Assembly: GCF_000150275.1 (NCBI RefSeq)
Contig: NW_002060947.1
Span: 7,115,880-7,179,879 of the forward strand
Direction: 5' to 3'
Origin: Trichoplax adhaerens
Taxonomy: Eukaryota; Animalia; Placozoa
DNA length: 64,000 bases
In this document: positions 34,096-63,900 of the stretch, piece by piece
How the letters are laid out: every line of letters begins with the position of its first letter
Numbering within the stretch: the stretch's first letter is position 1
Program-made: the position numbers and the translations under genes
Notes under the pieces: model-generated
Database searches by the model: none
Told to the model about the DNA's origin: nothing
Seen by the model: the letters and a program-made list of their open reading frames with translations, nothing else

Positions 34096-34787
34096 ATGAA
34101 GACTGCTCTTGCTATCGTATCGGTTCTGCTTTGTATGACAACCATTGTGGTAATTTTAGATTTATATTTACAAAGATTGATTTCTTGATTTGATTTGCAC
34201 AGTAATTTAAATTTTTACAATTTATTTCAGTCTGCTATCGTAACAGACTATGTGATCCAAAGTAAGACTTAATTTTGATTAGATTATTCGCTTTTATCTA
34301 CTAGTAAAATGGTACTCATTTCTTGTCCCTAATCTATTTACAATCTACTATAGCTGATCCACGAATTTGTAAAAACAGCGTGCTAGCTTTTAAAGTCCAT
34401 GGAACATCAGTAATTGCTTGCCCAGGTGGTTGGAGTGGACATATTAGTAACTCTAGATTGTGTGGAAGAGGTTATCACTTGTGCAATAAAAATGATAAAG
34501 GGCCCAAACTTTCCAAAATTAGCTACTCACATGGCATCAAAATTCCCGGCTGTTATGCCTTTAATGCAGCTCATGACTTTGGACAGTGTATTGACTGCGA
34601 GAATAAGCGACATCATGATGACTTAGGTGGCGTTGGTGTTACATGTCCCAGAAAAACTACCAGTCAAAGTACATCTTGTTTAACCGGTGGAACGATTGAT
34701 GCAGCACCGAATGTGAATTCCTCCAATAATAATAAAGGTTGCCGTTACCATCCAGGAATATCAGGCGTTCTATGCTGTAAGAATTAA
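34096..34787 (+). CDS. Secreted 12-Cys protein, copy A (intact, short pro-segment)
   Basis: Exons 34096-34149 (MKTALAIVSVLLCMTTIV, signal peptide), 34231-34261, 34354-34787 (..ICKN..IACPGGWSGH..LCGRGYHLC..PGCYAFNAAHDFGQCIDC..HDDLGGVGVTC..TSCLTGGTIDAA..GCRYHPGISGVLCCKN). TATAAA at 33966. Confidence 0.88.
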
Positions 34788-36059
34788 TAATCCACTTACA
34801 GTAAGAATCTTAGTAAGCTCCGTGTTATTTGATGTTGTAGTTTAAACAATGTTGAAGTTGCATAAGCGATATAAATCAATAAATTGATATGGAAAAAAAT
34901 TAATACCACTTAAGAATATCTAATTTACTTCCATAGCGCAGTAATTGTCTTGTTTATGGAAATATTCAGCTGTTAAAAGAATAAATTTAGTTAAGAACGA
35001 AGCTCAATCTACGCAATTGTAACCATAACCTAATCGTGTTAAAGCTATGAAGAACAGTGATTCATTACGAACTGATGTTACCGGATCTATGTTACGGGTG
35101 TTTGCAGTGATTAAAATAAAAAGTAAAAACGGTAAATGAAGAAATCAAAAACCCCTATATAATTGATTTTGTACCCGATCTGGAAAATACTAATCATTAA
35201 TTCAATTACAAAATAAAGTCTTCTTTAATTCTCTAGCATTACCATTTTCTTTTATTTTATGCAGGGCAATACTAAAATTGTTTTGCAATGTTTACGATAA
35301 CTGCATGATTATAGCGACAGGTACTAAATTTAATAGAGTTTCAATTACAATACAATGCGAAAATTTAAGTAATATAGTTTTCTGGGCCAAAGCAGTAGAT
35401 AGAAAACTTGAAGAATTGTTGGGCTCGGATGTAGGACAGAATGGGGCTTCATTAATTAAATTATCGAAAACCGATAGACGTTCGATTATGAACTACAATC
35501 GATGGCGTTGAAATAAATATAGATGCAACTTCATAAATGACTTGAGGTTTAACATCCATTATGTAATTTTATCCTAAGGACCTTTCAATATTAACGTTTG
35601 TAGTCAAGGCGGTAGTATACAATTTTAAGGATTGCGTTATATCAGCTCAAGCATTCATTTTGGATGTGTTCAAATACCTAATTCTTACTTTCAAGAACTT
35701 GTGAAAGTTTCAATTTTTGAGCTAATAGATTAAAAGCGTAGAACAAGATAAATGCAAGGCTGAGTATTCCTCTACCTGAGCTCAATCACTCAAACGGAAA
35801 ACAGCTTATTGAATTGCATAATACTGATCTGCAATGGATTATCTAGATATTCTGTCGCAACAATACTCGTAAATGCATTTTGGTGGTCGTTGAATTTACA
35901 GTAAGCAACCACAAGATCTATAGGTTATGGAATAATTAGCTCCCCAAAACTTTGTACACAAAGTAGCAGTATAGAGAGCCTGATAATGCATAACCCCATC
36001 GTCTTTATAAGATACAGTAAATAGGAAATACGGTTATACTGTCACCTAGTAAACACATC

Positions 36060-36490
36060 TTACGTATTTACTTTAGAACATCAACATTATCTATTTACCG
36101 TAACTGTAGATTTTAGCTAGGTCGTCAATTTTTCTACATCAAGCTAGCAAATATTCTATGTACTACTTTATAGCATCGATATGATCGATTCAATTATAAA
36201 TTTTGATTAGTCTGTCAATTTTTTCTATGTCAGTTTAGCAAAAAATCTGCTTGTCTACTTTAAAGCATCGACAAAATCGATTCAATTATAGACTTTAGTT
36301 AGGCTTTCAATCTTTTCCTGCACCAAGTTGGCAAACACTCCACGTTTCTACTTTGTAGCATCGATAATACCGATTTAATTATAGATTTTACATAGATTGT
36401 CAATTTTCCTACATCAAGCTTGCGAAACACGTACGTATCTACTTTTCTTATAATATCAACATTATCGATTTAATAATAAATTTTAGTTAG
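36060..36490. repeat. ~88-bp minisatellite, about 5 units
   Basis: Recurring TCTACTTT..AGCATCGA..ATCGATTCAATTATAGATTTT..GTCAATTTT.CTACATCAAG. Confidence 0.8.
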
Positions 36491-36766
36491 ACGTAGATAA
36501 GTGGATGATATCTGAGTTTATGTTGATACTTAAATTGGCGCAATAGTTATTAATATTATTTATATTGTAATAGTTGGAACTGACAGGGTCTACTTATAAC
36601 TAGTGCCTTAATGTATCGACAGAACATATATCCCACTATTTCTCTATCCTATTACTGAAATTGGAAAGGCGTTGAAATATTGGCTGAAATATTACTTTGA
36701 TCAACCTCATCGTCCAGATTTTTGACTTTTGTTCATTTTCCAGTACTAATAATCCATTAGTGAAAT

Positions 36767-37598
36767 ATGAAGACTTTTCTTTCTCTCCTGTGCGCTCTAC
36801 TCGGTCTAACTAGGTTTACGGTAATTTATTGTTTATATATTTATAATAATTACAGCTATTTCATTTGAAAAAATTTATTACACAGTTTAATTCCTAGAGT
36901 TAACGACTATATATCCGCTATATATCCGCCAAATTTTTCAGTCTGCTATGGTAACAGATCATCGAATCCGAAGTGCGGTTTTTGATAAAAATTTGTGTCT
37001 ACGACTCAATTTAAATATGAATTTCAACCCTCAGGTGGACTATGTCAAACGAAGTAAAACATTTTAAATTCAGCTTCATTGACTCGAATAACTATAACCC
37101 GTCGATTTCTTTAATCTTAGTTACTAGTAAAATTATACTTACTCTTGTTCTTAATCTTCAATAGTGAAGCCATCAATCTGTAGAAATAGTTTGATCGGTC
37201 TTAAAGTCTATAAGATATCAGTCATTGCTTGCCCAGGTGGTTAGAGAGGGCATATAAGTAACGCAACTTTGTGCGTTAGTGGTTATCATCTATGCAATAA
37301 AAATGACCAAGCATCCCTACTTTCCAAGATCACATATTCGCATGACGCTCAAATCGCTGGATGTTATGCATTTAATGCAGCTCATGATCTTGGACAATGT
37401 ATTTACTGCAAGAATCAAACATACCATGATGATTTAGGTGGTGTGGGTAGAACATGTCCTAGAAAAACCTCCAATCAAAGAACATCTTGCTTAACAGGTG
37501 GAACTATCGATACAGCGACCAGTGTTTCTTCCTTTAGAACCAATAAAGCTTACTATTATCATTCAGGAATATCTGGTGTTTTGTGTTGTAAGAATTAA
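36767..37598 (+). pseudogene. Secreted 12-Cys protein, copy B (probable pseudogene)
   Basis: Exons 36767-36820, 36942-37053, 37165-37598. In-frame TAG at 37242-37244 replaces the conserved Trp of GGW, and the 10th Cys is replaced by Tyr. Confidence 0.85.
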
Positions 37599-39628
37599 AA
37601 TCTATTATCTTAATAAGCCTCTTTTGTTGTTAATAAAAGTTCTAGTTTTAAAGATAGTCAGCAAGAATAAACTCTAACTGTATATTTTATTCGTTATATA
37701 AGCTACAGATAATTCGATGTGATTAAATTGATTTCGCTTACAATCGCTAATCCACTTTAAAAGAATATTCACTGCCTCAAGTAGAAGTGGTTAGTATTGT
37801 AATATCAAATATAGCTTTTCTAAAATACTCTTATAATGAGAAACAGATTAGGAACAAATCCTATTATGAGCAGTAATAACTGTAATCTGCTTAACAATGT
37901 TGTTAACTTCTTTTGCTATTTCTATTATTAACTGATATACTTTGTATGTCTGGACTGATGATTTGTAGGTTTGTTAAAAAATTAGCCTTGCAGTGCGACT
38001 AATTAAACTGCAAACATGATAAATTTCGAAATCATAAATCTCTAAATAGCAATCAAATTGTTTTGCGCAAAATTAATCTTTTGAGCAAGCCCTGAAAGAA
38101 AGTAGATCTTGTGAGTGTGAGACTTTATCCAAAGATAAAAGATAATTAATAAAGATGTTTAAATTCGATTAAGATAAACTCTTCGTCACGATTGTGAAAT
38201 ATTATGCTAAGCAGTTAGCTAGATGAGATAAAGTACTATATTTTTTATTTTCAGTAGAAAGAAATAGACTATTGGACTTATAAGAATATTCTGTGCCTGT
38301 ATATCGGGCACAGTAGTAGTAAACTGATGTTATTAAGACGTTATTAGAGTGGTATTATAAGAAACTATCTAACAGCGAAGTCCGATGATACTAACTTTAG
38401 TTCACTCTTCAACTGTAAGGTTACTAGACAGTTCTAAGATTTATACATGTTAAGACATGGAACGTAACTAGTACGTTATGAAGGCCTAATTTTGTTTTAT
38501 TCTTAGTTTAGAGGACTACAACAGGTACTAACCGTAGTGATATGAAATTAATAGAAATTGCATGGCGATGAATGTAATTTTTATTTCAAGTTAAAGTAGT
38601 AATAAGTAAAATTTCGACTAGCCTATAAGATGAATAAGACGTTATAATTCATGATATGACGGCATAAAAGTCTAGAAGTGAGTACCGGAGAAATAATTAT
38701 TACTTCTCTGATTTCTATGTAGCAAATAAATATATTGGTGTTTACAGTAAGCTTATGCTGAATTTATAATTTATTTCTAGAAGAAAAAGCTCCCGTAAAA
38801 CTTACAAACATCGAGATTTATTTCTGCTACGTTTGCTGCAAGCGTAGTTGTAGCAGTGTAGGAACCTGATAGCTCAGTCTAGTCCGGTAATTATGGCCTT
38901 TCTAAAAAATGTTTGATAGTATTTTAAAAATTATGTTAACAGATTTTCTATGTGGTATTCATGTATAACATTTGATCTAGAATTAGTTAGCTTGCCTAAT
39001 GTTTAGTGCTAATAAGTTATGTTAACTTAAGACTTAAAGAATTCTGCTCTCTTTTTTTTAAAATACTGCAAGAAATTACAATTTTGAAATCTAGCAAGTT
39101 TAAATTTTAGAAATTTATCAAGTAGGATAGTAATTCATCTAACTACATTCAGAAGATTCTAGTTACATAAACAATGCTGGAATTTTATTCCGGTTGGCAA
39201 CTGAAAATTATACGTAGATTTATAAGAGCAGTTTACTATTTGACGACAAGACTAAGTTTACATACTAATTAGTATATACTTCGTTGTACATGGTATTCTA
39301 ATATCATGATAAGTTACATCTATTAAAAAAAGTTACTTTATTATGAAGTTTAATAGACTTAATAGCAGTCTTAGCTATCTAATTATCAAAGTGTTAGTTT
39401 TCACTTTACAGTTTGGATTAATAATGCGATATGAACTTCTTATAAAATGCTATAATACTATGTAATTGAGTAGCAGAAACCAATAAGAAAGGTCTAGACT
39501 ATCTCTTTACTTTAAAAGTTACCGGATTGCAAATTAGAATACCAACAGATATGATGAATATTTATAATATATGTGTTAACTTGTATATAGCAGTAAAATC
39601 GCTTTCTCTCTCCATACATATATAGCCC

Positions 39629-40105
39629 TTGTTTTCTTCAGTTCTGTATCTGATATTGCTAAAAAATATTGAAATGACATCGTGCATTGACTAATCATAA
39701 GCTACTTTACAGAGATCGACATCATTGAATTAAGGATAAATTTTAATTAATTAAGTACTAATAATTGATGATATTCAAGTTTATTGATGTTTAAATGAAC
39801 GTAATAATTGTTAAATACTGCTTGTAATACAGCATTTAGAGCCAACTGGCCACTACATATTGTATAAATATTATTTTGCTTTCTTCAGTTCTATGTTTGA
39901 TGTTGCTAAAAAATCTCGAAATGATATCATGCACTGATTAATCATAAGCTACTTTACAGAGATCGACATCATCGAGTTATTGTTGGATTTTAGTAAATGT
40001 CAATAATTGGATGATACTCAAGTTTATATTGATCGAGTTAACGCAATAACTGCAAATACTGGTTATACTACAGCATTTGGAGCCGACTGGCCACAACGTA
40101 TTGTA
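39629..40105. repeat. ~250-bp direct repeat pair upstream of copy C (also at 60258-60735)
   Basis: TTCAGTTCT..TTGCTAAAAAA..TAATCATAAGCTACTTTACAGAGATCGACATCAT..CAGCATTT..ACTGGCCAC occurs twice. Confidence 0.85.
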
Positions 40106-40434
40106 ACACTGACGCCTTGACTAAGGATTTTGTAGAATATTTAATATACCACGATGACTACATCTGTATAAGCAAACAATATGCTTGTTACATATTAGCA
40201 AAATTTCCTTATTTTTGTTGAAATAATGAAGGGCAAGATATGAATCAGTATTTAAGAAAGGTTAAGCTATTATCATCTAGTACTGACAGAACCTATAAAT
40301 ATCCCAAATTTTCATCTTCTTACAACTGAAGTCGGAAAACCGGTCGAAGTACCGGTAGAAATATTTCCTTTAATCAATCTTAGCATACATATCCTCGACA
40401 TTAATTATTCTCTAGTATTCTATTTTGTGAGAAT

Positions 40435-41640
40435 CTGAAGATTTCTCTTGCTCTCGTGTGTATTTTACTCTGTATAACTACGCTTGTGGTAATTTATTGT
40501 CGAAATTATCAATCATTATAGCTGATTCATTTGTAAAGAAATAATGCGATTTAATTGCATAAGTAACCAACTTCATGTCTGCAATATCTTTAGTTTGTAT
40601 AGTGAAGCCCCAAATAAGGTTACGATTAAAATTATGGAATAATGCAAAAATAGATAAGTTTTACGCTAGGTTGCAAGACTACATACGTGTCTAATTGTGG
40701 AAGATGTTTACAGTACGTATTGTAGTAATTGTATTAAGGTGCTTATATTAAGAATCTGAGATAATAATAGATAGCGTTAATTATGTTAGTAATATGAGAT
40801 TTGTATTGTGACGCTTTAATTAGAAGCGCGAACTATGGATTTATAGCGCGATAATAAATTTAGATATGATCTTGTAACTTAATTTGTAAGACATGATTGT
40901 GCTTGAAAGAAAATCATTATATAACTAATTGTGTATAAATTATGAATATTGCCATTATAATTTATACAGTTCAGAGATAGACCTATTGAAACTAGATAGT
41001 TCTTGATAGTTATAAGACGAGCCTAACCTATGTAGTAAAGCGAAATTTACAAGAAGCTGTAGTTCTTTTGTATTTTTGAGAACATACTTTATCACAGTTT
41101 GCTATGGTAAAATATCCTCAAATCCAAAGACCGATTTATGATAAAAAATTGTACCTGCACTCCAATTTACGAATAGATATACAAACTCTCGAAGCGCCTA
41201 TACCAGACGAAGTCATTATTTTAAATTCATTTACTAGAATAATTATCAAACGTATCATTAATCTAATGTACTAGTAAAATGTACTCTTTTTTTGTCATTA
41301 ATTTTTAATAGGGACAACACCAATCTGTGGAAATAGCGTGATTGCTCTTAAAGTCTATGAGATATTAGTCATCGCTTGCCTAGGTGGTTGGAGAGGACAT
41401 ATTAGTAATACAAAATTATGCACTAGAGGTTACCATATGTGCAATAAAAATGATCGAGCATCTCTACTTTCCAAGATCACTTTTTCGTGTGGCATTCAAA
41501 TCTCTGGCTGCTATGCTTTTAATGCAGCCTATGATTTCGGACTATGTATTGATTGCGGGAATAGGGAACATCAAGATGATCTAGGTGGTGTAGGCATGAC
41601 ATATCCTGTCCTACAATCAAGGACTATCTTTATTATCTAA
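40435..41640 (+). pseudogene. Secreted 12-Cys protein, copy C (pseudogene; duplicate of copy E)
   Basis: ATG>CTG at 40435, ~0.5 kb insertion at the end of intron 1, a 2-nt frameshift in exon 2, and the C-terminal third deleted after ~41610 (sequence resumes with the equivalent of 62470). Confidence 0.88.
40592..41101. mobile_element. ~0.5 kb insertion flanked by a 6-bp direct repeat (AGTTTG); putative non-autonomous element
   Basis: AGTTTG at 40592-40597 and 41096-41101. The paralogous empty site in copy E (61221-61226) has a single AGTTTG. No ORF or clear terminal inverted repeats. Confidence 0.55.
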
Positions 41641-43599
41641 AATGAAGGGCTCTAATACCTCTTTACAGTAGATAGAAGTTATAGATGATATCAAAAGCGG
41701 TTAAGTAATTAGCTATTCTATTTATATCTAAATGCTTAATTACTACGGCTATATTTATTAAGAATATCGATATTCGATGACTAATATGAGACAGTTAGAT
41801 TATAATATGCCAATTCACAGAGTCGTCAAAACGCAACATAAATTCTAATATCGGTCAGATACAATCATATTTTACGGTACAAGGTACCGGTATATAAAGC
41901 ATAACCATCTCGTAAACTAAATGAAGATATGCTACCAAACATTGCTAACTTCTCTATGGTAAGATATCTTCGTGATAATCTTTCAAAAATTTAGTTGCTT
42001 AGAAAAGTCATAAAATAAAATAGATCTTGCGACTACAAGATTTCATCTGAGCAGGAGAATAGTTAACATTATTTAGAAATATACTTTGTTATGTACAAGT
42101 TTATAAAATAATATTAGTAGGTATAATAAATTACTTGGTGTTGATAGATGAGTAAGATAGATTATGAAGATTTCATTTAAATTCCAAAAACACAACGGAA
42201 GAATTTAAAACAACCAACTGAATCTCTCTAAATTTTGGCAATGTAGATTAGAGTGATAGTTATTAATTCATGAACTAATGTTTAAAATTCAGTATACAAT
42301 TCGGCGCTGAATACATAGAAGACTACAAAAAAATTTAGATTAAGATGTATATCTTGCCTCGATATCAGAGGATTATCATATCTGTTGGTAGCATGAATTA
42401 ATTAAAGTAATAATTATTTTCAGTAGAAAAAAGTGAACTAGCAGCAGGCTTACAATAGTATTTCATGTGCCTACAACACAATTCTTTTCTTTTTATTATT
42501 AATTAATATACTATTAGATCGGCAGCACACGGCGCTAACCAATCACTAATTTTAGTAATGTTTGCCTTAGATAGTTCTTTAACCTTATTGGTCTAATACT
42601 GTTTACAAAACTAGTCGGTTTTGATATTTGCATGTGTTATGATATGGCTAATTTATCTGCTGTAGCTGGGATCTATTAAAAGCCGGCTGTTCTTTTTGCT
42701 TAATTTAGAGGACTAAGATAGTGCTTGTATTGCTAATTCATCGTAGAGATGTAAAGTAAACGATGATTGTTAAGCAAAGAAATGTGATTTTGTTACATGT
42801 AAAAGTAGTAATAATTAACTTACATATACGAGTATATATTGATATGTTACGAGCAAAGATCAATTCTAACTTGCAATATAGGTTGAGAGTGTGTTTTCGG
42901 ATCTGCACTGCTGTGAATTGAAATACTAATTAATTTCTATATAGATATAACTAAGATTTAGCACAGTGAGGTCTCGGATCTCTCTAGAAAATCACAATCT
43001 ATCTCATTACTAGCGAGGCCGTAGCTTATATAGGTTCATGTACCTAAAGCCGACTTAATTATACGATTTATCTCGTCTTTTAGAAATCAATCAAATTAAT
43101 ACTCTGAAGAGTCTCAATTTATACGGATTAAACACAGTCTAATCCTGTTCAATTTACTGTTTCAGTATTCATTTACGACCAGGGATTACTTATTTCTATA
43201 CGAATTGATAAAGTTACGAAGTTATTTATTTGATTTATTTACATTCTTGTGACTAATCGCAATGTTAAAATAATGTAACAGCGCAAAATTAGAGCTAGCT
43301 TTGCAATTTAATATTGTTAAAATCTTTATCCAGGCATCGATTAAATCACATAGTATTTAGATGATTATTGAATATAGTGCTACGCTACGTCTTTACTATA
43401 TATTCGTATACATCATTATGTGAAACTAACTAGAGATGAAGGCAAATAGTTCTGTTCAGTTCAAGAAAACTTTACTGTAACAGTTATTTTAAAATTTGTG
43501 TGAATTCATAATTCAGGTTACCTGATGTTGGAGTGTTTACTTTTACGAAGTACAATAATGACGATGCTATCGATAAATAGTATTTAATAGCTATGCGAT

Positions 43600-46325: not shown

Positions 46326-48715
46326 ATGAAGACCGCTATCATCTTTTGCGCTTTATTTGCCGTGACCTTTGCATCAGGTAAATTTACTAGTACCATTCTA
46401 ATAATAGTAAAGATGTCAAGTAAAATTGTTATAAATTTACCGTACTTGATGCGCAAAGCGACGCTTTAAACGCAATCCAGTATTAGGCAATAGCTTATTA
46501 AGTCAATTTATTTCTATCCGTCTATTTTTGCAGTGTTGGTATACAATTGTATACTCTAATGACTGATAATTGGTTTTAATTTATTGTTTAAGCTGTGATT
46601 TTGATCATTACTCTTTTATGTTGATGTTTATAACTCTCCAATTGGTAATCCATATTTCTAATGTTATTTCTATATTCTTACTAACACTGTAGTTCGTCCA
46701 GTGCCATTTGACTTGGATGAACAGCACGAAACTGGTAAGTTAAGGATGTAACATTTTACTATTGCTACGTAATTCTGATATGTATCGTGAGGATAAGCCA
46801 AACAACAATAAGTTATGCATCGATAATCATATATTGACTAACTTAATGAGATGTAAGAAAGAAATGAAAGAAGTCCTCTATACTATTTGTATAGGATAGA
46901 AGAGTAGTATTTAAATGACTGATGATAGTCGTTCATTATCATGGTTACTTATAAGAGATACCAATTGAAACTGGACTTAGAACAGTATGTAAAACAAACA
47001 AAATTACAATCTATTTTAATTTAGCTATTCCTGTAACTGTCGACATGTTTACATTAGAACCGTATCTCAGTATCATCGTGATGCCATTACTTGAACGCTA
47101 TTCGCGGTCGATTCGATTGTATTGTAGTTCTATCGAAGCAATGAAACTAGTACAGTAAAATTGCAATTCAAGTAGTGTCATATTGTACTCTACTTATGCT
47201 TCAAGTAGTATGCAAAACAAATTAAATTGCAATTTATTTAATTTCGCTTATAATAACATAGCTACGACTCTCGGTATTTCGATATTACTACAGCATTATA
47301 TCATCACTATGCTATTACTTCAATACCATTCATCGTCGATCAGATAGCGTTCTAGTTCCATCCGAGCAATGTAACTTATGCAGTCAAGTCACAGTTTAAA
47401 TAGTGTAATAGTTTACTCTGTAGATAAAGAATCGGCTTGTCAAATAATTTTTATCCCAATTTGTTCACTTATTTCAATGTTCGTCCATTTAATGGTATGA
47501 AATAACCTTGTACATTACAGTTGAATACAACCCTAAGGTGTTGACTGTACCTGCCAGGAAAGATATAGATAGAATTATTAACGGTCAAAATGACGTGAGA
47601 GGCGAACACCCATACCAGATCTCTTTGCAAAGAAAAAATCCTTCTCAGCCTGGCTCATTCTACCACACATGTGGTGGCTCCATCATTAATCAGCAGTATA
47701 TTTTGACTGCTGCTCACTGTGTTGACAGCGGTGTAGCATCTGACTTCAGAGTAGTCGCCGGTGAATACGATTTCAGCAGAAACGACAATTCTGAACAAAC
47801 CATTGCTGTTACTAAACTGTAAGAAATCGATGTCTAAGACGTTATAATTTATCATTAAATCTAGAACTAAATAGGTTACTCTTTATTCCATAATTATAAT
47901 ATGAATTATAATTATTGGATAGCATGAAACATATTGCTTCTTTGCCATCCTATGCAGTAACAATCATCTTAGGCTTTATAACGCGGATCGATAAAAATAT
48001 CCTTGCGTGACCGAGTCTTCTCTGACATTTTATTTTTCACAGTATCATCCGTAGCGATTGGAATCCAGCTAAGATCAACAATGATATTGCTGTTGTTAAA
48101 TTGGCCAGCAAATTGACCTTCAATAGCTATGTTGCTCCTATCGCGTTGGCTTCTGTTACTCCACCAACCAATACAGCAAGTCAGGTTACTGGATGGGGAT
48201 TAACTAATTATTTCCTTCAAACCAGACCTAACATTCTACAAGTATTGAACGTCAAAAGAAGATCGGACAGTGACGCTGCCGCATCAAGCAGTAACTACAA
48301 TAGTTTTTCTCAAGTCGCAGCTACTACTACTGCATACCGTGATGGAACCTGCCAAGGAGACAGCGGTGGCCCACTTGTATTCAAACAGAATAACCAATAC
48401 CAGCAATATGGCGTCGTTAGCTACGGCACAGTCCGTAAGTTTGAATGAACATGATTATTATTAGAACTTGATTCAAAAGATTGCAGTGTGATAATCAACT
48501 AGCGGTTTTACTATACCTTCGCCAAATAGAATGTTGGATAGCCCATGTATTTCGCTTTGAAAGTCTTACGGCATGAAGGAATATTATGACCAATTAATTA
48601 CTAATGTTCATTTTGAATACTTTTTTTTCTTACAGCTTGCTCATGGTCCTCTGCTGATTTCTATGCCCGCGTTTCTTCCTTCAAGACCTGGATCGAAAAT
48701 AACTCCCGCATTTAA
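46326..48715 (+). CDS. Secreted chymotrypsin-family (S1A) serine protease zymogen
   Basis: Exons 46326-46377 (signal MKTAIIFCALFAVTFAS), 46693-46734, 47521-47818, 48043-48434, 48636-48715. Activation site DR|IING; catalytic motifs TAAHC, NDIAV, GDSGGP; C-terminus YARVSSFKTWI. Probable 5'UTR intron 46079-46260 and TATAAAA at 45987. Confidence 0.95.
46985..47420. repeat. ~220-bp diverged direct repeat in protease intron 2
   Basis: AGTATG.AAAACAA..GC.ATTACTT..GTCGAT..TAGTTC.ATC..AGCAATG.AACT..TAGTGT.ATA..TACTCT occurs twice. Confidence 0.7.
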
Positions 48716-51425: not shown

Positions 51426-52320
51426 TATAGTAATAGTACTGGTACTGCAAGGATCGAATTTACCACGTATAGAGTTTATTCTAAACTATAAAATTATTTA
51501 TAAGTATGTTACAGGCAATCTCGGCAAGGCAGCGTTCAAAAGCGTTTTCTGTGAAAGCATTCTCTCGGAATGCAAACAATTATAAGGGATTGCCTAGGAT
51601 TACCGATAATATAGTGAAAGTATGTAAATGCAGAGACATTCATAAAGGATTTCCTAGGATTACTGACAATTTATAAGCGTTCCTGGGAATTATTTTCTTT
51701 TTAAAAGCATCATTTAGCATTGAACGGTAGCACAATTTAAATACGCCATAGAAAAGGCCCTCATTGGCAAATATTGCTTATCAAAATTGAAATTTTTTTC
51801 TGAGATTGCTACACATTAGATTCATTCATAATAACCCCGATTATTCAAATACTTAATATTCAAGAACATTCCCACAGAATGCTCTGCCAGCATTGCTTAT
51901 TTTAGAAGTGCTGTTATCTTCACATCGTTGCCTATATACAGTATTGTAATAGCTAGAGCTGACTGATATAATCTATAACTGATGCATTGGCTATCGAAAA
52001 TTTTATAAATAAATATCTCTTAACAACCAGGCATCCATAGGAAATAACGTTTATGCTAGGGTAGCAATAAATATGACACAGTTCTTGTTGACATGGTTAA
52101 TAATGAAATACGAAAGCAAGCTTGGCTTTATATTAATATGATCAATAATCACTGACCATGCGGTATTAACAAAGCATATAAATACTTGATAACTTGTCAT
52201 CATCGTGTAACTCAAAGCGGAAAAAGCATTGAAACTTTGGCTAAAAAGGATTACTGTAATTGACCTCAACATCTCTATCCTTGACTAACTCATCCACTTC
52301 TCGTTTCCAGCTGTCAAAAC

Positions 52321-53124
52321 ATGAAGGCTATTCTTGCACTCTTTTGTGCTCTACAATTGATGACTCTTGTTGCGGTAATGGATTATAATTAGTCATTAAT
52401 TACAACCACTGCTAATGTGATATGATTCTCAGAGAAATCAACTACCAATCTTGCAATTTTTCAGCCATCCGCCGCGGCATATTATTCTAAATATAACAGG
52501 AATTACCTTAAAAAACTACTTCTTCAACTTGATTTAAAACTCAAACTCCAATCAAAGAAGCACCACATTAATCATAGTAAGACTTTAAAATAAAATACTG
52601 TTTCTTTCATTTTGCTAACTGAACTGTAAACTAAATCTTCCGTTTCATACCATATTAACATTTATTCTCGTTTTAATCCATAAGGTTCTACGGACAGACT
52701 AAGGATTTGTAAAGAAAGCAGCTCTGTAATCAAAGTCTATCATTCATCGGTCATTGGTTGCCCAGGCAGTTGGACTGGCCACATTCGAAACGCCGATTTG
52801 TGTGGCAGAGGATATCATTTATGTAATAAAAACGACAGAAGGTCCCTACTTTCCAAGATTACCTACAAAGATGCCATTAAAATCCCTGGCTGTTATGCAT
52901 TTAATGCAGCCCATGACTATTACAAGTGTATTGACTGTGAGAATAGAACGGCTCACGATGATCTAGCCGGTGTCGGTAGGGCATGTCCTATAAAAGTCGA
53001 ACGTAGAACATCCTGTATAACAGGAGGGATGATTGATGCAGCAAAAACCCTTGAGAGCTACAGCCATAAGAGGGCTTGCCAGTATCATTCAGGAATATCT
53101 GGTGTTTTGTGTTGCAAACATTAA
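52321..53124 (+). CDS. Secreted 12-Cys protein, copy D (intact, most divergent)
   Basis: Exons 52321-52374 (MKAILALFCALQLMTLVA), 52465-52576, 52685-53124 join in frame. All 12 Cys present; ends GISGVLCCKH. Confidence 0.88.
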
Positions 53125-56100: not shown

Positions 56101-56384
56101 GTAGACAATTGAAAAATATTCTCTACAAACCTGCTTTCAGATTGGAATTGTATTCTGAGATTGTTACACATTTAAGACCATTCTTGCTCTGTAGTATTGG
56201 CAACTCTTAAAAGTGCTCTTACTTTAGCATCTTTGTCTATAAATGGTACTTTACTTTAATAACTACAGCCAATGGGACAATAAGCAATTGATACCTTGAT
56301 ATCACAGTCATCAAAATAATTTCGATACAATCTTGTATAATCGGTGCAATGACCAATACAGCAAATAACACGCATGGCTACAAA

Positions 56385-56438
56385 AATAAAAAAGCTTGCC
56401 ATTATTATTCAGGAATATCTGGTGTTCTGTGCTGTTAA
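56385..56438 (+). pseudogene. 3' remnant (copy F) of the 12-Cys gene family
   Basis: Encodes NKKACHYYSGISGVLCC. Downstream sequence (~56440-56810) resembles the 3' flank of copy D (~53125-53440). Upstream exons are not recognisable. Confidence 0.75.
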
Positions 56439-57958
56439 GAATTCAACTCCTTTTTGAAGGAGTTTATCTTGCTGCCATTTTATATTCTAATTTTAAAACA
56501 TACATTATAGCAGTATAATAAATTAATAGGTACTCTCTCCCTGTACATATCATTAACTAGAAGCATTTATTCGTTATTAAATTAATGCGTCAATGATTTA
56601 ATTTACACTTCTGTAGAACGTTAATCGCCTTTGAATAAGAGTTAGCGATACCAAATGAAGGATTTTTTGACTAAATGACAAGTTGAATCAGAAACTAATC
56701 TCAATAAATGCGGTCATGAGCATAGTTTAATCATATCGTTATACTTTGAAGAAAGTTTGTAATATTTTAATGGTACTCCGTCCCTTTCTATTAATTACTA
56801 CATTAGATAAGAATATTTATAGTAAGTACGTACTTTTGATAGGTATGTAATTGTGTTTTGTGGCGGACAACTATTGATTATGTTTAATTCAATTGGAAAA
56901 TAAATTCTTCGATATGATAATGTGTTCCACAGTGCTAACGGTAATTATCCCTTAAGCTATAGTCTAAAAAATTTCAGAAATTACTATAATATGAGGAAAA
57001 GATTTCTACCCTACTACTATCACTGCAATACTGTAACGCCAGTATTAATATTTCACAATTAATGTAGACTTTACTCAGTGAGTAATTTAATAGATTAGAA
57101 CGGGTTTTAAAGCTAATTTCAAAAAATTGCAGTTCAATAAATACCAGGATTGTTCTTGTCTTTATATACTGAGATCAAAGAAACCGGAGATTAAAAGAAG
57201 TAGCATGAGACCTTATCTCAGAAAATTGTTTAAATTTTTCGCAGTCACACCAATTGTGTGGAAATTTATACGGTGAAATCGATAAATTGGATTACATGAT
57301 TGACTTTTTAGTATCAGATCTATTATTTAAATGGTTTAATCTAAGTTTATCGAAATGTAAGGATTTATGTTGCATATATAATTATAAAATCCATTTCTTC
57401 CTACAAGATTAGCTGTTTTACAATATAATATACAAGCAATTTTTAAAAATAATTGACAAGTATAGCTAGATGCCGACTAATAATTTTACTAGATCGCTCA
57501 ATCATACGGTGCCAATGCATTTTCGATATCTTACTCAGACATTTTTGAAAATTCCACCTAGCTTTGCAAATAACAACACTTCTATCATTATTTTAACGGA
57601 ATTTAATATCGTACCGTGCTATATCCAAAGTAAAAACAATTTTACTAATCAAGTTTAAGCCATGTTTATTATACTTATTAAGTTGATGTTGTAGTACTTA
57701 TTCAACCAAAATTAATAGATTACAATAAAAATATATTAATTTCAATGCTAAACTATTTAATCTAAGAATAATTTATACATTTTTGCGGTAATGCAAAATT
57801 TATTCCTAGAAAAATTTATAGAAAAGACAGCAATAGAGCAATAAAGTATTAGAAAATGCTTAGAATATTGTTACAGTAGCACATTGATAACGACATCATG
57901 TTTGTTACCTACATGCACACCGCGAAAGAAGTAGACAAGTGGACTAGTAACAGTATTT

Positions 57959-60900
57959 TGTGTCTGTACATCAGGCACAGTAGTAGTAAATTGATATTAT
58001 TAAGACGTTATTAGAGTAGTATTATAAGAAACTATCTAACAGCAAAGTCTGATGATACTAACTTTGGTTCACTCTTCAACTGTAAGGTTACTAGACAGTT
58101 CTGAGATTTATACATGTTAAGACATGGAACGTAACTAGTACGTTATGAAGGCCAATTTTTCTTTATTCTTAGTTTAGAGGACTACAACAGGTACTTACCG
58201 TAGCGATATGAAATTAATAGAAATTGCATGGTGAGGAATGTAATTTTATATCAAGTAAAAGTAGTAATAAGTAAAATTTCGACTAGCCTATAAGATGAAT
58301 AAGACGTTATAATCCATGACGTGATAGCAAAAAATCTAGAAGTGAGTACCGGAGAAATAATTATTACTTCTATGATTTCTATGTAGTAAATAAATATATT
58401 GGTGTTTATAGTAAGCCTCTGCTGAATTCATAATTTATTTATGGAAGAAAAAGCTCTCGTAAAACTTACAAACATCGAGATTTATTTCTGCTACGTTTGC
58501 TGTAAGTGTAGTTGTAGCGGTGTAGGAGCCTGATAGCTCAGCTCAGTCTAGTCCGGTAATTATGGCCTTTCTAAAAATGTTTGACAGTATTTTAAAAATT
58601 ATGTTAACAGATTTTCTATGTGGTATTGATGTATAACATTTGATCTAGAATTAGTTAGCTTGCCTAATGTTTAGTGCTAATTAGTTATGTTAACTTGAGA
58701 CTTGAGAATTCTGCTCTTTTTTATAAATACTGCAAGAAATTACAATTTTAGAAATTTACCAAGTAGAACAGTAATTTATCTAACTACATTCAGGAGATTC
58801 TAATTACTTAAACAATAATGGAATTTTATTCCGGTTAGCAATTGAAAATTATTACGCAGATTTATAAGAGCAGTTTACTATTTGACGACAAGACTAAATT
58901 TACGTACTAATTAGTATATACTTCGTTGTACATGGTATTCTAATATCATGATAAGTTACATCTATTAAAAGAAGTTACTTTATTGTGAAGCTTTATAGAC
59001 TTACTAGTAGTCATAGCTATCTAATTATCAAAATGTTAGTTTTCACTTTATAGTTTGGACTAATAATGCGATATAAACTTCTTATAAAATGCTATAATAC
59101 TATGAAATTGAGTAGCAGAAACCAATAAGAAAGGTCTAGACTATCTCTTTACTTTAAAAGGTACCGGATTGCAAATTAGAATACCAATAGATATGATAAA
59201 TATTTATAATATATGTGTTATATGATTGGCTATTTTCGTTAAATTTATGTTATAGATTTAATGTAAGCGGAAGTGAAATGCAAAAAGAGTAAGTATTAGT
59301 TTGCTTCATAATTTAAAAATTGATCACATTTCAGATGATAATATAGACTTCTTTGATGGAATTTTCAAGGATGTTTCTCACACAAGCATCATCTATTGCT
59401 GTAATTTTTCTTTTACTACGTAACGTTTTATATCATGAAAATAATAAATTTTTTGGTAAACGTGTAAAAAGATCAAGTATGAACTTGAAAAATCTTCCTT
59501 AAGATTACAAACATTGATCATAAACACAAATTGACCCTGAATTTTACCTATTTATTAGCATCATAATGACTTGGTTAGGAATCATCAGCAGAAAATTAAG
59601 AACAAAAACTACACACTAATTGTATTAGAAAATGTTGTAATAAAAATTTTGTAAATTTTTTTAGATAATTTGAAACTCTCCATACTCACAAAATCTCGCA
59701 AATTGATAAACTTAATTCTAGCCGTTCATTAGTATTATCATAATTTGAGAAAGAATTATGAGCCACAAATGGAGAATAGGAACTACATCAATTGTATTCG
59801 ATAATACTCTGATAAAAAATTTTTGCAATTTTTTTGCGATATTTAGAAACTATCTGTAAATAAAATGTATATAGCGTCTATATCTTGGAAGATAGATAGG
59901 AACAACAGTTATAAAGCTAATTTTACCGGCGTTAAACTAACAAATATTATCTAAAAATATACAGAAGTTGGATGCTGCTATTACTCTTTTCTAAAATGTT
60001 AGGTGTCATTATGAAACTACTGTGTATAGGCTCTAAAAGATCATTAATTATACCATTAATTATAGAAATTAGTTGACAAAAGTCAATTTTATTATCACAA
60101 TCGAACTATAAGTCTTAACTGATATCATAGAACTTTAGTTTTCGGCTATTTCTATAAAACACGATAATATCTTACGTCATTTAATTGTCAATATTGATAT
60201 GAAACTTTGATTTTATTCCGTCAAGTAGCAGACTGATTCTAATTATTATTCATTATCTTGTTTTCTTTAGTTCTGTATCTGACATTGCTAAAAAATATTA
60301 AAATGACATCGCGCATTGACTAATCATAAGCTACTTTACAGAGATCGACATCATTGAATTAAGGTAAATTTTAATTAATTAAGTACTAGTAATTGATGAT
60401 ATTCAAGTTTATTGATGTTTAAATGAACGTAATAATTGTTAAATACTGCTTGTAATACAGCATTTAGTGCCCACTGGCCACTACGTATTTTATAAATATT
60501 ATTTTGCTTTCTTCAGTTCTATATTTGATATTGCTAAAAAAATCTCGAAATGACATCATGCACTGATTAATCATAAGCTACTTTACAGAGATCGACATCA
60601 TCGAGTTATTGTTGGATTTTAGTAAATGTCAATAATTAGATGATACTCAAGTTTATATTGATCGAGTTAATGCAATAACTGCAAATACTGGTTATACTTC
60701 AGCATTTGGAGCCGACTGGCCACTAGGTATTGTAACACTGACGCCTTGACTAAGGATTTGTAGAATATTTAATATCCCACGATGACTACATCTGTATAAG
60801 CAAACAATATGCTTGTTACATATTAGCAAAGTTTCCTTATTTTTGTTGAAATAATGAAGGGCAAAATATGAATCGGTATTTAGGAAAGGTTAAGCTATTA

Positions 60901-63900
60901 TCATCTAGTACTGACAGAACCTATAAATATCCCCAATTTTTATTTTCTTACAGCTGAAGTCTGAAAACCGGTTGATGTATCGGCAGAAATATTTCCTTTA
61001 ATCAATCTTAGCATACATATTCTTGACATTAATTATTCTCTAGTATTCTATTTTGTGAGAATATGAAGATTTCTCTTGCTCTCGTGTGTATTTTACTCTG
61101 TATAACTACGTTTGCGGTAATTTATTGTCGAGATTATCAATCATTATAGCTGATTCATTTGTAAAGAAATAATGCGACTTAATTGCATAAGTAATCAACT
61201 TTATTTCTGCAATATCTTTTAGTTTGCTATGGTAAAATATCCTAAAATCCGAAGACCGATTTATGATAAAAAATTGTGCCTTCATTTCAATTTACTAATA
61301 GATACATACTCTCGAAGCGCCTATACCAGACGAAGTAATTATTTTTAAATTCATTTACTAGAATAATTATCAAGCGTATCTTCAATCTAATTTACTAGTA
61401 AAATTATACTCATTTTTTGTCCTTAATCCTTAATAGCGGCACCACCAATCTGTGGAAATAGCGTGATTGCTCTTAAAGTCTATGAGACATTAGTCATCGC
61501 TTGCCCAGGTGGTTGGAGAGGACATATTAGTAATGCAAAATTATGCGCTAGAGGTTATCATGTGTGCAATAAAAATGATCGAGCATCTCTACTTTCCAAG
61601 ATCACTTTTTCGCGTGGTATTCAAATCCCTGGCTGCTATGCTTTTAATGCTGCCCATGATTTTGGACGATGTATTGATTGCAAGAATAGGGAACATCAAG
61701 ATGATCTAGGTGGTGTAGGCATGACATGCCCTAGAAAAACCACTAGTCAAAATACATCCTGCTTAACAGGCGGAACTATTGATGCAGCAATGGATGTTTC
61801 TTCCTTTGCGACTAATAGAGCTTGCCATTATCACCCAGGAATATCTGGTGTTTTGTGTTGTGAGAATTAATCTCTATTTCTCAACGTGTCTATTTCGTTG
61901 TTATTACAAGTTCTAGTTTAAAGATATTGATGACAAGAACGAACGATGTTGATACGATATATGTGAACTAAAGTAGAGGCTAATTTGATGTGATTAAATT
62001 GATTTCAATTAGAATAGCTAATATAATTACGTAGAATACCGGTATGTATCGTCTTGAGTAAAATGTTTTGTTACAAGGTCAAATATCGCTTCGTTTAAAA
62101 TAGAATAAGAAATTGATTTCCTAACGAATCTCAATAGGTACTGATATAATTATAATCTGTTGTAATAATGTTATTAACCTCTTACCCAATTTATATTATC
62201 AACTGATCTATTTTATGTTTGGATCGGTCATTAAATAAAAGTAAAATGAAATACGTTAAATGTCAAAATTAAAAATCTCTCCGTAGTTATTTACGCATCT
62301 TTATCACAAACCAGCTCTGTCATAAGATAACGAAATAGCTCAATTTATAAGTTCTTTCCTTAAACTACGTATCAGGGCACTGAAATCCGTCTAAGACAAG
62401 CTTAGGAACACTTTTCTCTAATTCCACAGATTCTCAATAATTTGAACGTCTTTGACTTTGCGTTAAGCACTACAATCAAGAACTAACTTTATTATCTAAA
62501 ATGAAGGGCTCTAATACCTCTTTACAGTAGATAGAGGTTATAGATAATATCAAAAGTAGTTAAATAATTAGCTATTCTATTTATATCTAAATGCTTAATT
62601 ACTACGGCTATGTTTATTAAGAATATCGATATTCGATGACTGATATAAGACAGTTAGATTATAATATGCCAATTCACAGAATCATCAAAACGCAACATAA
62701 ATTCTAATATCGGTCAGATACAATCATATTTTACGGTACAAGGTACCGGTATGTAAAGTATAACTGTCTCGTAAACTAAATGAAGATATGCTACCAAACA
62801 TTGCTAACTTCTCTATGGTAAGATATCTTCGTGATAATCTTTCAAAAATTTAGTTGCTTAGAAAAGTCATAAAATAACATAGATCTTGCGACTACAAGAT
62901 TTCATCTGAGCAGGAGAATAGTTAACATTATTTAGAACTATACTTTGTTATAGACAAGTTTATAAAAAAATAATAGCAGGTATAATAAACTACTTGGTGT
63001 TGATAGATTATGAAGATTTCATTTAAATTCCAACAACACAACAGTAAGAATTTAAAACAACCAACTGAATCTCTCTGAATTTTGGTAATGTAGATTAGAG
63101 TGATAGTTATTATAATATTCATGAACTTATGTTTAAAATTCAGTATGCAATTCGGCGATGAATACATGGAAGACTACAAAAAATTTGGATTAAGATGTAT
63201 AACTTGCTTCGATATCAGAGGATTATCACATCTGTTGGTAGCATGAATTAATTAAAGTAATAATTATTTTCAGTAGAAAAAAGTGAACTAGCAGCAGGCT
63301 TACAATAGTATTTCATGTTACTACCACATAATTTTTTTCTTCTTATTATTAATATACTATTAGATCGGCAGCACAAGGCGCTAACCAATCACTAATTCTA
63401 GTAATGTTTGCCTTAGATAGTTCTTTAACCTTATTGGTCTAATACTGTTTACAGAACTAGTCAGTTTTGATATTTTCATGTGTTATGATATGGCTAATTT
63501 ATCTGCTGTAGCTGGGATCTATTAAAAGCCGGCTGTTCTTTTTGCTTAATTTAGAGGACTAAGATAGTGCTTGTATTGCTAATTCATCGTAGAGATGTAA
63601 AGTTAACGATGATTGTTAAGCAAAGAAATGTGATTTTGTTACATGTAAAAGTAGTGATAATTAACTTACATATACGAGCATATATTGATATGTTACGAGC
63701 TAAGATCAATCCTAACTTACAATATAGGTTGAGAGTGTGTTTTCGGATCTGCACTGCTGTGAATTGAAATACTAATTAATTTCTATGTAGATGTAAGTAA
63801 AATTTAGCACAGTGAGGTCTCGGATCTCTCTAGAAAATCACAATCTATCTCATTACGAGCGAGGCCGTAGCTTCTATAGGTTCATGTACCTAAAGCCGAC

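What the first reader, a model, noticed from the sequence alone, without database searches (positions are those of the whole stretch)
34096..61870. Tandem family of small secreted prepro-proteins built from a single 12-Cys domain I cannot assign to a named family
Seen: six copies in 28 kb (A, D, E intact; B, C pseudogenes; F remnant). They share an 18-codon signal exon, a pro-segment exon and one exon for a ~145-aa Lys/Arg/His-rich domain with 12 conserved Cys and motifs C-P-G-x-W-x-G-H, LCxxGYHxC, GCYAFNAAHD, (H/Q)DDLxGVG, SCxTGGxIDAA and GISGVLCC. From memory (unverified), a very similar module occurs inside large invertebrate CPAMD8/thioester-protein-like and EGF-repeat proteins; here it stands alone as a secreted protein. 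Inference: the LCxxGxHxC ... GVLCC framing recalls C-type-lectin-like folds (FGE-sulfatase/Link type). The rapid birth-and-death suggests an effector family, such as a lectin, antimicrobial, lytic/toxic or feeding secretion. This is the best candidate for an undescribed system.
Basis: partly seen in the sequence, partly recalled or inferred. Interest (0 to 1): 0.85.

Follow-up and report, generated by a model that had tools for sequence, protein, structure and literature searches.

The report
Placozoan secreted 12-cysteine lectin-like gene cluster
A Trichoplax gene cluster encodes small secreted proteins, each made of one copy of an ancient, unnamed 12-cysteine domain with a distantly C-type-lectin-like predicted fold; the domain also occurs in an uncharacterised animal matrix-type protein and in myxobacterial surface proteins, and its function is untested.

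Summary
The window (Trichoplax, contig C1410) carries six copies of a three-exon gene: A, D and E are intact, B and C are broken, and F is a 3' remnant. A seventh intact copy, G, lies 10.5 kb beyond the window.

Each intact gene has an 18-codon signal exon, a variable second exon (10 or 37 codons) and a terminal exon of about 145 codons with 12 invariant Cys and its own stop codon. Old paralogues are under purifying selection (dN/dS 0.14-0.22).

The domain matches nothing in Pfam, NCBIfam or PDB sequences, but it is not an orphan. A profile search finds 250 cluster representatives:
- a conserved, uncharacterised animal protein (module-Ig-module-EGF) from sponges to tunicates, with a Trichoplax orthologue on contig C1407;
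- many Myxococcota lipoproteins and large surface proteins.

Best reading: a placozoan-specific expansion of soluble, basic ligand-binding proteins with a divergent lectin-like fold. The ligand, transcription and splicing are unverified, because the sequencing runs found were DNA. The same domain was noted before in this scan, just beyond the window (s1-733019).

The parts
34096..34149 (+). Copy A exon 1: ATG plus 18 codons, hydrophobic signal-peptide exon, GTAA donor
   Evidence: same exon in Trichoplax sp. H2 model P0003
34231..34261 (+). Copy A exon 2: 10 codons plus 1 nt (phase 1); probably holds the signal-peptidase site
   Evidence: matches exon 2 of H2 model P0003
34354..34787 (+). Copy A exon 3: 12-Cys domain, terminal exon with stop codon
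36767..37598 (+). Copy B, pseudogene. Exon 1 36767-36820, exon 2 about 36942-37053, exon 3 about 37165-37598. In-frame TAG at 37242-37244 at the conserved Trp position, and one framework Cys replaced by Tyr.
   Evidence: DNA runs X1 and X2 also carry a 10-nt insertion after 37279
40435..41640 (+). Copy C, pseudogene and recent duplicate of E (92-96% nt identity). No ATG, about 490 bp extra in intron 1, domain exon truncated after about 290 nt, one Cys replaced by Tyr.
52321..52374 (+). Copy D exon 1: signal exon, 18 codons
52465..52576 (+). Copy D exon 2: 37 codons plus 1 nt, Lys/Leu-rich variable segment
52685..53124 (+). Copy D exon 3: 12-Cys domain, terminal exon
56330..56443 (+). Copy F: remnant of the last ~38 codons of the domain exon
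61063..61116 (+). Copy E exon 1: signal exon, 18 codons
61223..61334 (+). Copy E exon 2: 37 codons plus 1 nt, basic, one extra Cys, ends in Arg-Arg just before the domain. The reading frame is shared with copy B.
   Evidence: present in H2 model P0002
61437..61870 (+). Copy E exon 3: 12-Cys domain, terminal exon. AlphaFold model m87954e864177 covers window 61427-61867.
47508..48448 (+). Trypsin-like serine protease gene (two exon ORFs) lying inside the cluster. Neighbour only; not shown to be part of the family's function.

Best explanation
The cluster is a placozoan-specific tandem expansion of small secreted proteins (about 150 residues when mature). Each is a single copy of an ancient, so far unnamed extracellular 12-Cys domain.

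Shown:
- The gene anatomy: signal exon, variable exon, then a terminal domain exon.
- Seven copies in one array, four of them intact.
- Purifying selection on the old paralogues.
- Homology to the two modules of a conserved metazoan module-Ig-module-EGF protein and to C-terminal modules of Myxococcota lipoproteins and surface proteins.
- No match to any curated family.

Inferred:
- The domain adopts a disulfide-stapled, divergent C-type-lectin-like fold and works as a non-enzymatic binding module for an extracellular ligand, most likely a glycan or another polymer on microbial or matrix surfaces.
- In Trichoplax the module has been released from its matrix-protein context and made soluble and basic (pI 8.5-9.1). 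It is probably secreted into the external digestive or mucosal space, where paralogues that differ mainly in surface loops recognise different targets (feeding or defence).
- The long second exon of E, and formerly B, may be a propeptide removed at its terminal dibasic site. Copy A has none.
For: Anatomy and splice phases. The evidence-based H2 annotation model P0003 has the same three exons (annotation method in PMC6057997).

Stop codon directly after the domain in every copy.

Selection: dN/dS 0.14-0.22 with dS above 1 among A, D and E; A is identical in protein to its H2 orthologue.

Census: nine modules in the genome, seven of them in this array.

Homologues:
- 250 representatives at E<=1e-3 and 149 at E<=1e-10.
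- Animal module-Ig-module-EGF proteins in sponge, echinoderm, hemichordate, tunicate, mollusc, annelid, nemertean, priapulid, centipede and nematode.
- The Trichoplax orthologue, with an Ig exon between the two modules.
- Myxococcota loci.

Fold: models with pLDDT 91.3 and 96.8. All 50 top VIA-align neighbours of both models are CTLDs, and the weak Foldseek hits are also dominated by CTLDs.

Charge: stand-alone modules have pI 8.5-9.1, against a median of 4.6 for the bacterial-type modules.

Tree: the placozoan stand-alone clade has support 96 and lies on the animal side of a 96-supported split from 69 bacterial-type modules.
Against: - No transcript evidence was obtained. The runs holding the locus behave as genomic DNA (even depth over intergenic DNA, no joints).
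- Lectin_C does not match by HMM or by profile-profile comparison (probability 0.05%).
- The CTLD hallmark motifs (WIGL; EPN/QPD with WND) are absent.
- No ligand, localisation or cell type is known.
- The signal peptide is judged by eye only.
- Exon 2 is not conserved between subgroups, so the propeptide reading rests on E and B alone.
Confidence: 0.6

Rival explanations
1. Antimicrobial or cytolytic effectors. The basic, His/Lys/Arg-rich, disulfide-rich proteins would act directly on prey or bacterial membranes or walls rather than only binding them. The cationic exon-2 segment of D and G would serve as an amphipathic pro- or co-peptide.
For: Net charge +4 to +9 and 6-8 His per module. Exon 2 of D is Lys/Leu-rich. 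The array is tandem with dead copies and has a very recent duplicate pair (D and G) whose differences cluster in one loop. It sits beside a trypsin-like gene.
Against: The second module of the animal multidomain proteins is just as basic (median pI 9.3), so charge is not specific to the stand-alone copies. A 145-residue globular domain under purifying selection looks more like a binding module than a membrane-active peptide. No similarity to a known AMP or pore-former was found.
Confidence: 0.15
2. Secreted signalling or matrix-regulating ligands. They would be soluble decoys or competitors of the conserved module-Ig-module-EGF protein, binding the same endogenous partner, and would be processed like prohormones at dibasic sites.
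For: Homology to the modules of the conserved animal protein. Exon 2 of E and of B ends in a dibasic pair just before the domain.
Against: Copy A lacks any pro-segment. The stand-alone clade is not nested within either module clade of the animal protein. Copy-number turnover with three dead copies suits environmental targets better than a fixed endogenous partner.
Confidence: 0.12
3. The genes are untranscribed or decaying, or the domain exons belong to one larger multidomain transcript.
For: No RNA evidence was obtained here. Three of seven copies are dead. The H2 annotation fuses B and C into one model and gives E's orthologue no signal exon.
Against: dN/dS 0.14-0.22 over dS above 1. All 12 Cys are retained in A, D, E and G. 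Each copy has its own ATG, signal exon and consensus splice sites, and a stop codon immediately after the domain. The evidence-based H2 model P0003 is a complete three-exon gene.
Confidence: 0.08
4. A catalytic CTLD-like variant, by analogy with FGE-type enzymes, using the conserved His and Asp residues with a metal.
For: Conserved acidic positions in the NAAxD, DD(L/M) and (R/T)IDA motifs. Some CTLD-fold families are enzymes (general knowledge).
Against: The His in the W-x-G-H motif is not conserved in bacterial members. There is no match to FGE-sulfatase or any enzyme family. The usual context, as a terminal module of adhesin-like proteins, is typical of binding domains.
Confidence: 0.05

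Closest known systems
Uncharacterised metazoan module-Ig-module-EGF proteins (for example Acanthaster planci LOC110977079, Strongylocentrotus LOC100893885, Mizuhopecten OWF50963 auto-named 'Titin', Sycon 'adhesive plaque matrix protein 2-like')
   Same: True homologues of the domain (E 1e-40 to 1e-70 with the Trichoplax profile), with the same Cys framework and motifs. Trichoplax has its own orthologue on C1407.
   Different: Those proteins are about 500-640 residues, with two modules flanking an Ig domain and followed by EGF repeats. The window genes are a single module with a signal peptide and nothing else. They form a separate, well-supported clade. None of these proteins has a described function, and no paper was found.
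Myxococcota lipoproteins and large surface proteins carrying the same module at the C-terminus
   Same: Homologous domain (E down to 1e-35) with a shared Cys framework and the motifs GC(F/Y)A-x-(N/D)A, DM-x-G-x-G and GRIDA. Found in Myxococcales, Polyangiaceae, Archangium, Myxococcus and Kofleriaceae MAGs.
   Different: They are acidic (median pI 4.6) and carry an insertion of about 10-20 residues after the fifth Cys. They are joined to lipobox linkers, fn3, TSP3/MopE, LamG, beta-propellers or nSTAND1-WD40. A branch with support 96 separates them from the animal modules.
C-type lectin-like domain superfamily (Pfam Lectin_C PF00059; also Link and APT-type compact CTLDs)
   Same: Both AlphaFold models retrieve only CTLDs as structural neighbours over nearly the whole domain. 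The framing is similar, with a Cys near the start of the helical part and a Cys in the last strand. Both are extracellular, and both occur with EGF and Ig domains.
Lcl_C / DUF1566 (PF07603) and other bacterial CTLD-like modules
   Same: Weak language-model neighbour (0.78). These are bacterial surface modules with a CTLD-like fold.
   Different: No HMM match, and the score is in the range that chance hits reach. A lead only.
Hydra SWT (sweet tooth) domain proteins
   Same: Taxon-expanded secreted proteins built only from one domain type, in an early-branching animal.
   Different: SWT proteins are about 370-390 residues with two domains and a predicted beta-sandwich, lectin-like fold (PMC3531485). 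They are unrelated in sequence and Cys pattern. Considered and rejected.

Membership tests
C-type lectin-like domain (Pfam Lectin_C, PF00059) | Significant match to the Lectin_C profile HMM | tested here: not met
   No Pfam hit at E<=1 for A, D or E. A genome-wide Lectin_C search lists 58 matches, none at the cluster or at the C1407 modules.
C-type lectin-like domain (Pfam Lectin_C, PF00059) | Profile-profile similarity to canonical CTLDs | tested here: not met
   hhalign of the Trichoplax module profile A1 against nine Trichoplax CTLDs (A6): probability 0.05%.
C-type lectin-like domain (Pfam Lectin_C, PF00059) | CTLD fold (two helices, two antiparallel sheets, N- and C-terminal strands paired) | tested here: inconclusive
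C-type lectin-like domain (Pfam Lectin_C, PF00059) | WIGL-type core motif, and the EPN/QPD plus WND Ca2+/carbohydrate site of true C-type lectins | tested here: not met
   Neither motif appears in the alignments of 6 and 39 modules. The canonical Trichoplax CTLDs do show WIGL.
C-type lectin-like domain (Pfam Lectin_C, PF00059) | Conserved disulfide linking helix 1 to the last strand | not testable with these tools
Only the linear framing (LC...GVLCC) is compatible.
Unnamed 12-Cys module family (metazoan module-Ig-module-EGF proteins and Myxococcota surface proteins) | Significant full-length profile match across the domain | tested here: met
   250 representatives at E<=1e-3; 128 domain hits cover at least 115 of 146 profile positions.
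Unnamed 12-Cys module family (metazoan module-Ig-module-EGF proteins and Myxococcota surface proteins) | Shared Cys framework and motifs (C-x-G-x-W-x-G, LC-x-x-G-[WY]-x-x-C, GC[YF]A, D[ML]-x-G-x-G, SC...G-x-ID, GV-x-CC) | tested here: met
   Invariant or nearly invariant columns in the 39- and 40-sequence alignments.
Unnamed 12-Cys module family (metazoan module-Ig-module-EGF proteins and Myxococcota surface proteins) | Multidomain context (Ig and EGF in animals) | tested here: not met
   The window genes are a single domain with their own stop codon. They are therefore domain homologues, not orthologues of the multidomain protein, whose Trichoplax orthologue is on C1407.
Hydra SWT (sweet tooth) proteins | SWT domain (about 180 residues, beta-sandwich prediction, few Cys) | tested here: not met
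   The description in PMC3531485 does not fit a 145-residue, 12-Cys alpha/beta domain.
Secreted prepro-protein | N-terminal signal peptide | tested here: inconclusive
   Every intact copy has an ATG, a basic residue and a hydrophobic 18-codon exon, followed by small residues at -3/-1. No signal-peptide predictor was available.
Secreted prepro-protein | Conserved pro-segment with a processing site | tested here: inconclusive
   Exon 2 has 10 codons in A and 37 in D and E, and is unrelated in sequence between D and E. Only E and B end in a dibasic pair.

The most novel reading that the evidence does not exclude
The 12-Cys module is an undescribed extracellular domain superfamily, a highly divergent CTLD-like fold with six disulfides. 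It is shared only by Metazoa (from sponges on, apparently lost in vertebrates) and Myxococcota, which hints at an ancient transfer between bacteria and stem animals. Placozoans have turned it into a diversifying family of soluble, basic recognition or effector proteins for extracellular feeding or defence, with specificity set by one hypervariable loop.
Probability: 0.3. Interest if true: 0.65.

Novelty: new variant of a known kind. Interest (0 to 1): 0.5.

Why it matters
The finding delimits a well-conserved domain that no curated library covers. An AlphaFold model at pLDDT above 90 is available for a placozoan and for a bacterial member.

The domain defines a near-universal but unstudied invertebrate extracellular protein (module-Ig-module-EGF). 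It also links that protein to myxobacterial surface proteins.

In Placozoa, which digest prey externally and have few cell types, a lineage-specific family of soluble versions is a tractable entry point for asking what the domain binds. It also adds a candidate class to the sparse list of placozoan secreted feeding or immunity proteins.

If the lectin-like reading is right, it extends the CTLD superfamily by a branch undetectable by sequence. If it is wrong, the fold itself is new.

Tried and rejected
1. Hydra SWT ('sweet tooth') domain as the identity. Rejected after reading PMC3531485.

2. Pfam, NCBIfam and PDB-sequence searches with single modules and with a 39-sequence profile. All blank.

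3. Foldseek against PDB with both models. Nothing at E<=0.001.

4. hhalign against canonical Trichoplax CTLDs. No similarity.

5. RNA evidence. The look-up of sequencing runs found no run on record as RNA that holds the locus.
- Read laying on window 33600-39400 showed that X1 and X2 are genomic DNA (even depth across intergenic DNA).
- X4 and X8 give only patchy low-depth contigs.
- There were no joints.
- Expression and splicing therefore stay unverified; this is not evidence of silence.

6. Exact look-ups of P0003 and P0016. They returned only genomic contigs. The P0016 model reads through a TGA and its N-terminus is an artefact.

7. The search for related loci with the broad alignment A2 failed for lack of a conserved stretch. 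It was repeated with the bacterial subset A3.

8. CPAMD8/thioester co-occurrence. Not seen in the 64 multidomain representatives.

9. Upstream motif AAAGCATTGAAAC.
- It is exact at equivalent positions before A and D.
- The window-wide count equals chance, so no regulatory claim is made.

10. Gene neighbourhoods of the Myxococcota homologues. Not interpretable from raw ORFs at 64-76% GC; dropped.

11. Paper searches for the H2 locus tags and for LOC identifiers of the animal homologues. No papers.

12. The joined (spliced) full-length models of A, D and E were not assembled or searched. Exons were searched by reference only, and the database protein P0003 served as the full-length example.

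Full report
ORGANISM AND OBSERVATION

The window is G000:C1410:7115880-7179879 of a 105.6-Mb, 1414-contig, roughly 32% GC genome. The nearest database proteins are hypothetical proteins of Trichoplax sp. H2, at 97-100% identity for the orthologues of A and E. The genome is therefore a Trichoplax, a placozoan.

Six-frame ORFs and translations show the described domain on the + strand at six places. A whole-genome search with one module, and then with a six-module profile, finds nine modules in total. Seven lie in one array on C1410: six in the window and one 10.5 kb beyond its end. Two lie on C1407. Among the six Trichoplax modules aligned, 29 columns are invariant, including all 12 Cys.

GENE ANATOMY

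This comes from reading the sequence directly.

The intact copies share one plan:
- exon 1 is ATG plus 18 codons of a basic-then-hydrophobic peptide, ending at a GTAA donor (phase 0);
- exon 2 ends in phase 1 at a homologous A|GTAA donor;
- exon 3 starts after a (Y)nAG acceptor, encodes the domain, and ends with a stop codon two residues after the terminal CC.

Coordinates:

| Copy | Exon 1 | Exon 2 | Exon 3 |
|---|---|---|---|
| A | 34096-34149 | 34231-34261 | 34354-34787 |
| D | 52321-52374 | 52465-52576 | 52685-53124 |
| E | 61063-61116 | 61223-61334 | 61437-61870 |

The H2 annotation came from an evidence-based pipeline that used transcriptomes (PMC6057997). It holds a 172-residue model (P0003) with exactly the three exons of A.

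Exon 2 is not a uniform pro-segment:
- In A it has 10 codons. Small residues there fit a signal-peptidase site, so A probably has no propeptide.
- In D it has 37 Lys/Leu-rich codons. G has an identical exon 1.
- In E it has 37 basic codons, with an extra Cys and a terminal Arg-Arg.
- The dead copy B keeps E's exon-2 reading frame at 75% nucleotide identity and ends in Lys-Arg. This argues that the long form is coding in that subgroup.

Because every domain exon carries its own stop codon and every copy its own ATG and signal exon, the exons are not pieces of one large protein.

Exons were used by reference.

BROKEN COPIES

- B has an in-frame TAG at the conserved Trp position (37242-37244) and a framework Cys replaced by Tyr. 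Two DNA runs of other individuals also carry a 10-nt insertion after 37279.
- C is a recent duplicate of E (92-96% identity, including 500 bp upstream). It has no ATG, about 490 bp extra in intron 1, a Cys-to-Tyr change, and has lost the last third of the domain.
- F is a 114-nt 3' remnant.

SELECTION

Nei-Gojobori estimates on the domain exon give dN/dS of 0.14-0.22 with dS of 1.1-1.5 for A/D/E/G pairs. This is long-term purifying selection. D and G are recent duplicates (dS 0.022, dN 0.024). A's domain exon is identical in protein to that of its H2 orthologue.

Five of the eight D/G differences fall in one 12-residue loop, at domain residues about 120-131. This is suggestive, but the numbers are too small to test.

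'Birth and death' therefore describes copy number, not the survivors' sequence evolution.

THE DOMAIN IS UNNAMED BUT NOT ORPHAN

Pfam-A, NCBIfam and PDB sequences give nothing, either with single modules or with a 39-sequence profile. Precomputed Pfam annotations on animal homologues list only Ig and EGF families.

A profile search of 1.84 billion cluster representatives finds 250 at E<=1e-3, 149 at E<=1e-10 and 20 at E<=1e-30.

The best non-placozoan hits are proteins of about 450-640 residues with two modules. Pfam and names show the architecture signal peptide, module, Ig, module, EGF repeats. It occurs in these taxa:
- sponges (Sycon, Oscarella);
- echinoderms and hemichordates;
- tunicates;
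- molluscs and annelids;
- a nemertean, a priapulid and a centipede;
- a basal nematode.

All are 'uncharacterized', or auto-named hemicentin-like, Notch-like or 'Titin'. No paper mentions them.

Trichoplax has the orthologue on C1407: module, Ig exon, module, EGF exon.

The remaining hits are bacterial-type: short lipoprotein-like proteins, or the C-terminal module of large proteins carrying fn3, TSP3/MopE, LamG, cadherin-like, beta-propeller or nSTAND1-WD40 regions. A scan of species-representative genomes places ten such loci in Myxococcota MAGs.

PHYLOGENY

This is a quick maximum-likelihood tree of 114 modules.
- The placozoan stand-alone modules (this genome, H2, and two more distant placozoan-like contigs at 50-63% identity) form one clade (SH-aLRT 96).
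- That clade lies on the animal side of a 96-supported split from 69 bacterial-type modules.
- Its nearest neighbour, on a weakly supported (unresolved) fork, is an Oscarella protein.
- It is not nested in either the first-module or the second-module clade of the multidomain protein.

The family is thus an old placozoan offshoot of the animal module rather than a recent exon copy of the C1407 gene or a recent bacterial import. The root, and hence the direction of any animal-bacterium transfer, is undetermined.

FOLD

AlphaFold2 was run with the 39-sequence alignment for module E, and with a 40-sequence alignment headed by a 136-residue bacterial protein. The models have pLDDT 91.3/pTM 0.88 and pLDDT 96.8/pTM 0.90, and are mixed alpha/beta.

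Foldseek finds nothing significant. Its weak hits are pertussis-toxin S2/S3, mincle, KLRG1, ovocleidin, CD93, codakine and TaqVP, all CTLD-type.

Sequence-level tests of CTLD membership fail:
- no Lectin_C HMM hit, although the genome has at least 58 canonical CTLD exons;
- hhalign probability 0.05%;
- no WIGL motif and no EPN/QPD-WND motif.

I therefore file the domain as 'works and probably folds like a compact CTLD', at roughly 70% confidence. I do not file it as a member of the Lectin_C family.

MECHANISM (INFERRED)

A disulfide-stapled CTLD-like module sits at the end of adhesin-like bacterial proteins and next to Ig/EGF in animal extracellular proteins. That context makes it most simply a ligand-binding module.

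The Trichoplax stand-alone proteins are basic (pI 8.5-9.1, net +4 to +9, 6-8 His), whereas bacterial modules are acidic, with a median pI of 4.6. They vary mainly in surface loops.

Together with a signal peptide and no anchor, this points to soluble recognition proteins released into the external digestive or mucous layer. They would most plausibly bind anionic glycans or microbial surfaces.

A trypsin-like gene lies inside the array, but adjacency is not evidence of co-function.

Direct antimicrobial action, an endogenous signalling or decoy role, and non-expression are kept as rivals.

EXPRESSION

When laid on 33600-39400, the two best holders cover genes and intergenic DNA alike at even depth, so they are genomic. 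Two small runs give patchy contigs. No joints were seen. Transcription and splicing therefore rest only on selection, splice consensus and the evidence-based H2 model.

NOVELTY AND SCORE

The gene family and the domain are undescribed in the curated libraries and in the searchable literature. The kind of thing, however, is familiar: a lineage-specific tandem family of secreted, Cys-rich, lectin-fold-like binding proteins derived from an ancient extracellular module. I rate it a new variant of a known kind, interest 0.5.

The same domain was noted by this scan just beyond the window (s1-733019). I confirmed that it is the seventh copy, G.

Noticed in passing
window 47508-48448 (+): Two exon ORFs of a trypsin-like serine protease (Pfam Trypsin, E 5e-20 and 3e-16) lie in the middle of the 12-Cys array, on the same strand.
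   Followed up: partly
window 26838-27644 (-): 268-aa single-exon ORF of the alpha/beta-hydrolase type with a G-F-C-D-G nucleophile-elbow motif. Already noted by the scan as a BPHL-like hydrolase (s1-775951).
   Followed up: no
window 20190-20504 (+); L010:1-486: A short-chain dehydrogenase (adh_short) exon lies upstream of the array. In Trichoplax sp. H2 the gene upstream of A's orthologue is also adh_short, so local synteny is conserved between the H1-like and H2 genomes.
   Followed up: partly
window 37275-37279: DNA runs X1 and X2 (other individuals or strains) differ from the window inside pseudogene B: two substitutions and a 10-nt insertion after 37279. This is an indel polymorphism in a dead copy.
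   Followed up: partly
window 34012-34024 and 52223-52235: An identical 13-mer, AAAGCATTGAAAC, lies 84 and 98 nt upstream of the ATG of copies A and D, with degenerate versions before B, C and E. The window-wide count with 2 mismatches equals chance, so only the positional conservation is notable.
   Followed up: partly
window 53040-53075 versus L004:1815-1850: Five of the eight amino-acid differences between the very recent duplicates D and G fall in one 12-residue loop of the domain (residues about 120-131). The H2 orthologue resembles G there. This may be a diversifying loop, but the changes are too few to test.
   Followed up: partly
window 39684-39864, 39931-40434, 60313-60492, 60560-61063: The 500 bp upstream of E is duplicated before C at 96% identity. 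Its first ~180 bp occur again as a tandem partial repeat (77-78% identity) just upstream in both places. This shows that the E/C duplication unit included the promoter region.
   Followed up: no
L022:7601-9038 (-) = G000:C1407:225600-227037: The Trichoplax orthologue of the conserved animal module-Ig-module-EGF gene. An Ig I-set exon (L022:8168-8458) lies between the two 12-Cys module exons, and an EGF exon follows.
   Followed up: yes
L011:547-1038: Database protein P0016, from a 28% GC placozoan-like Logan contig, is a mis-called gene. Its N-terminus reads through a TGA; only the domain exon, which again ends with CCKN and a stop, is real.
   Followed up: yes
P0072 (1586 aa, metagenomic): One bacterial homologue joins an nSTAND1 NTPase and WD40 propellers to a C-terminal 12-Cys module. 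This is an unusual pairing of a normally cytoplasmic signalling ATPase with a disulfide-rich module.
   Followed up: no
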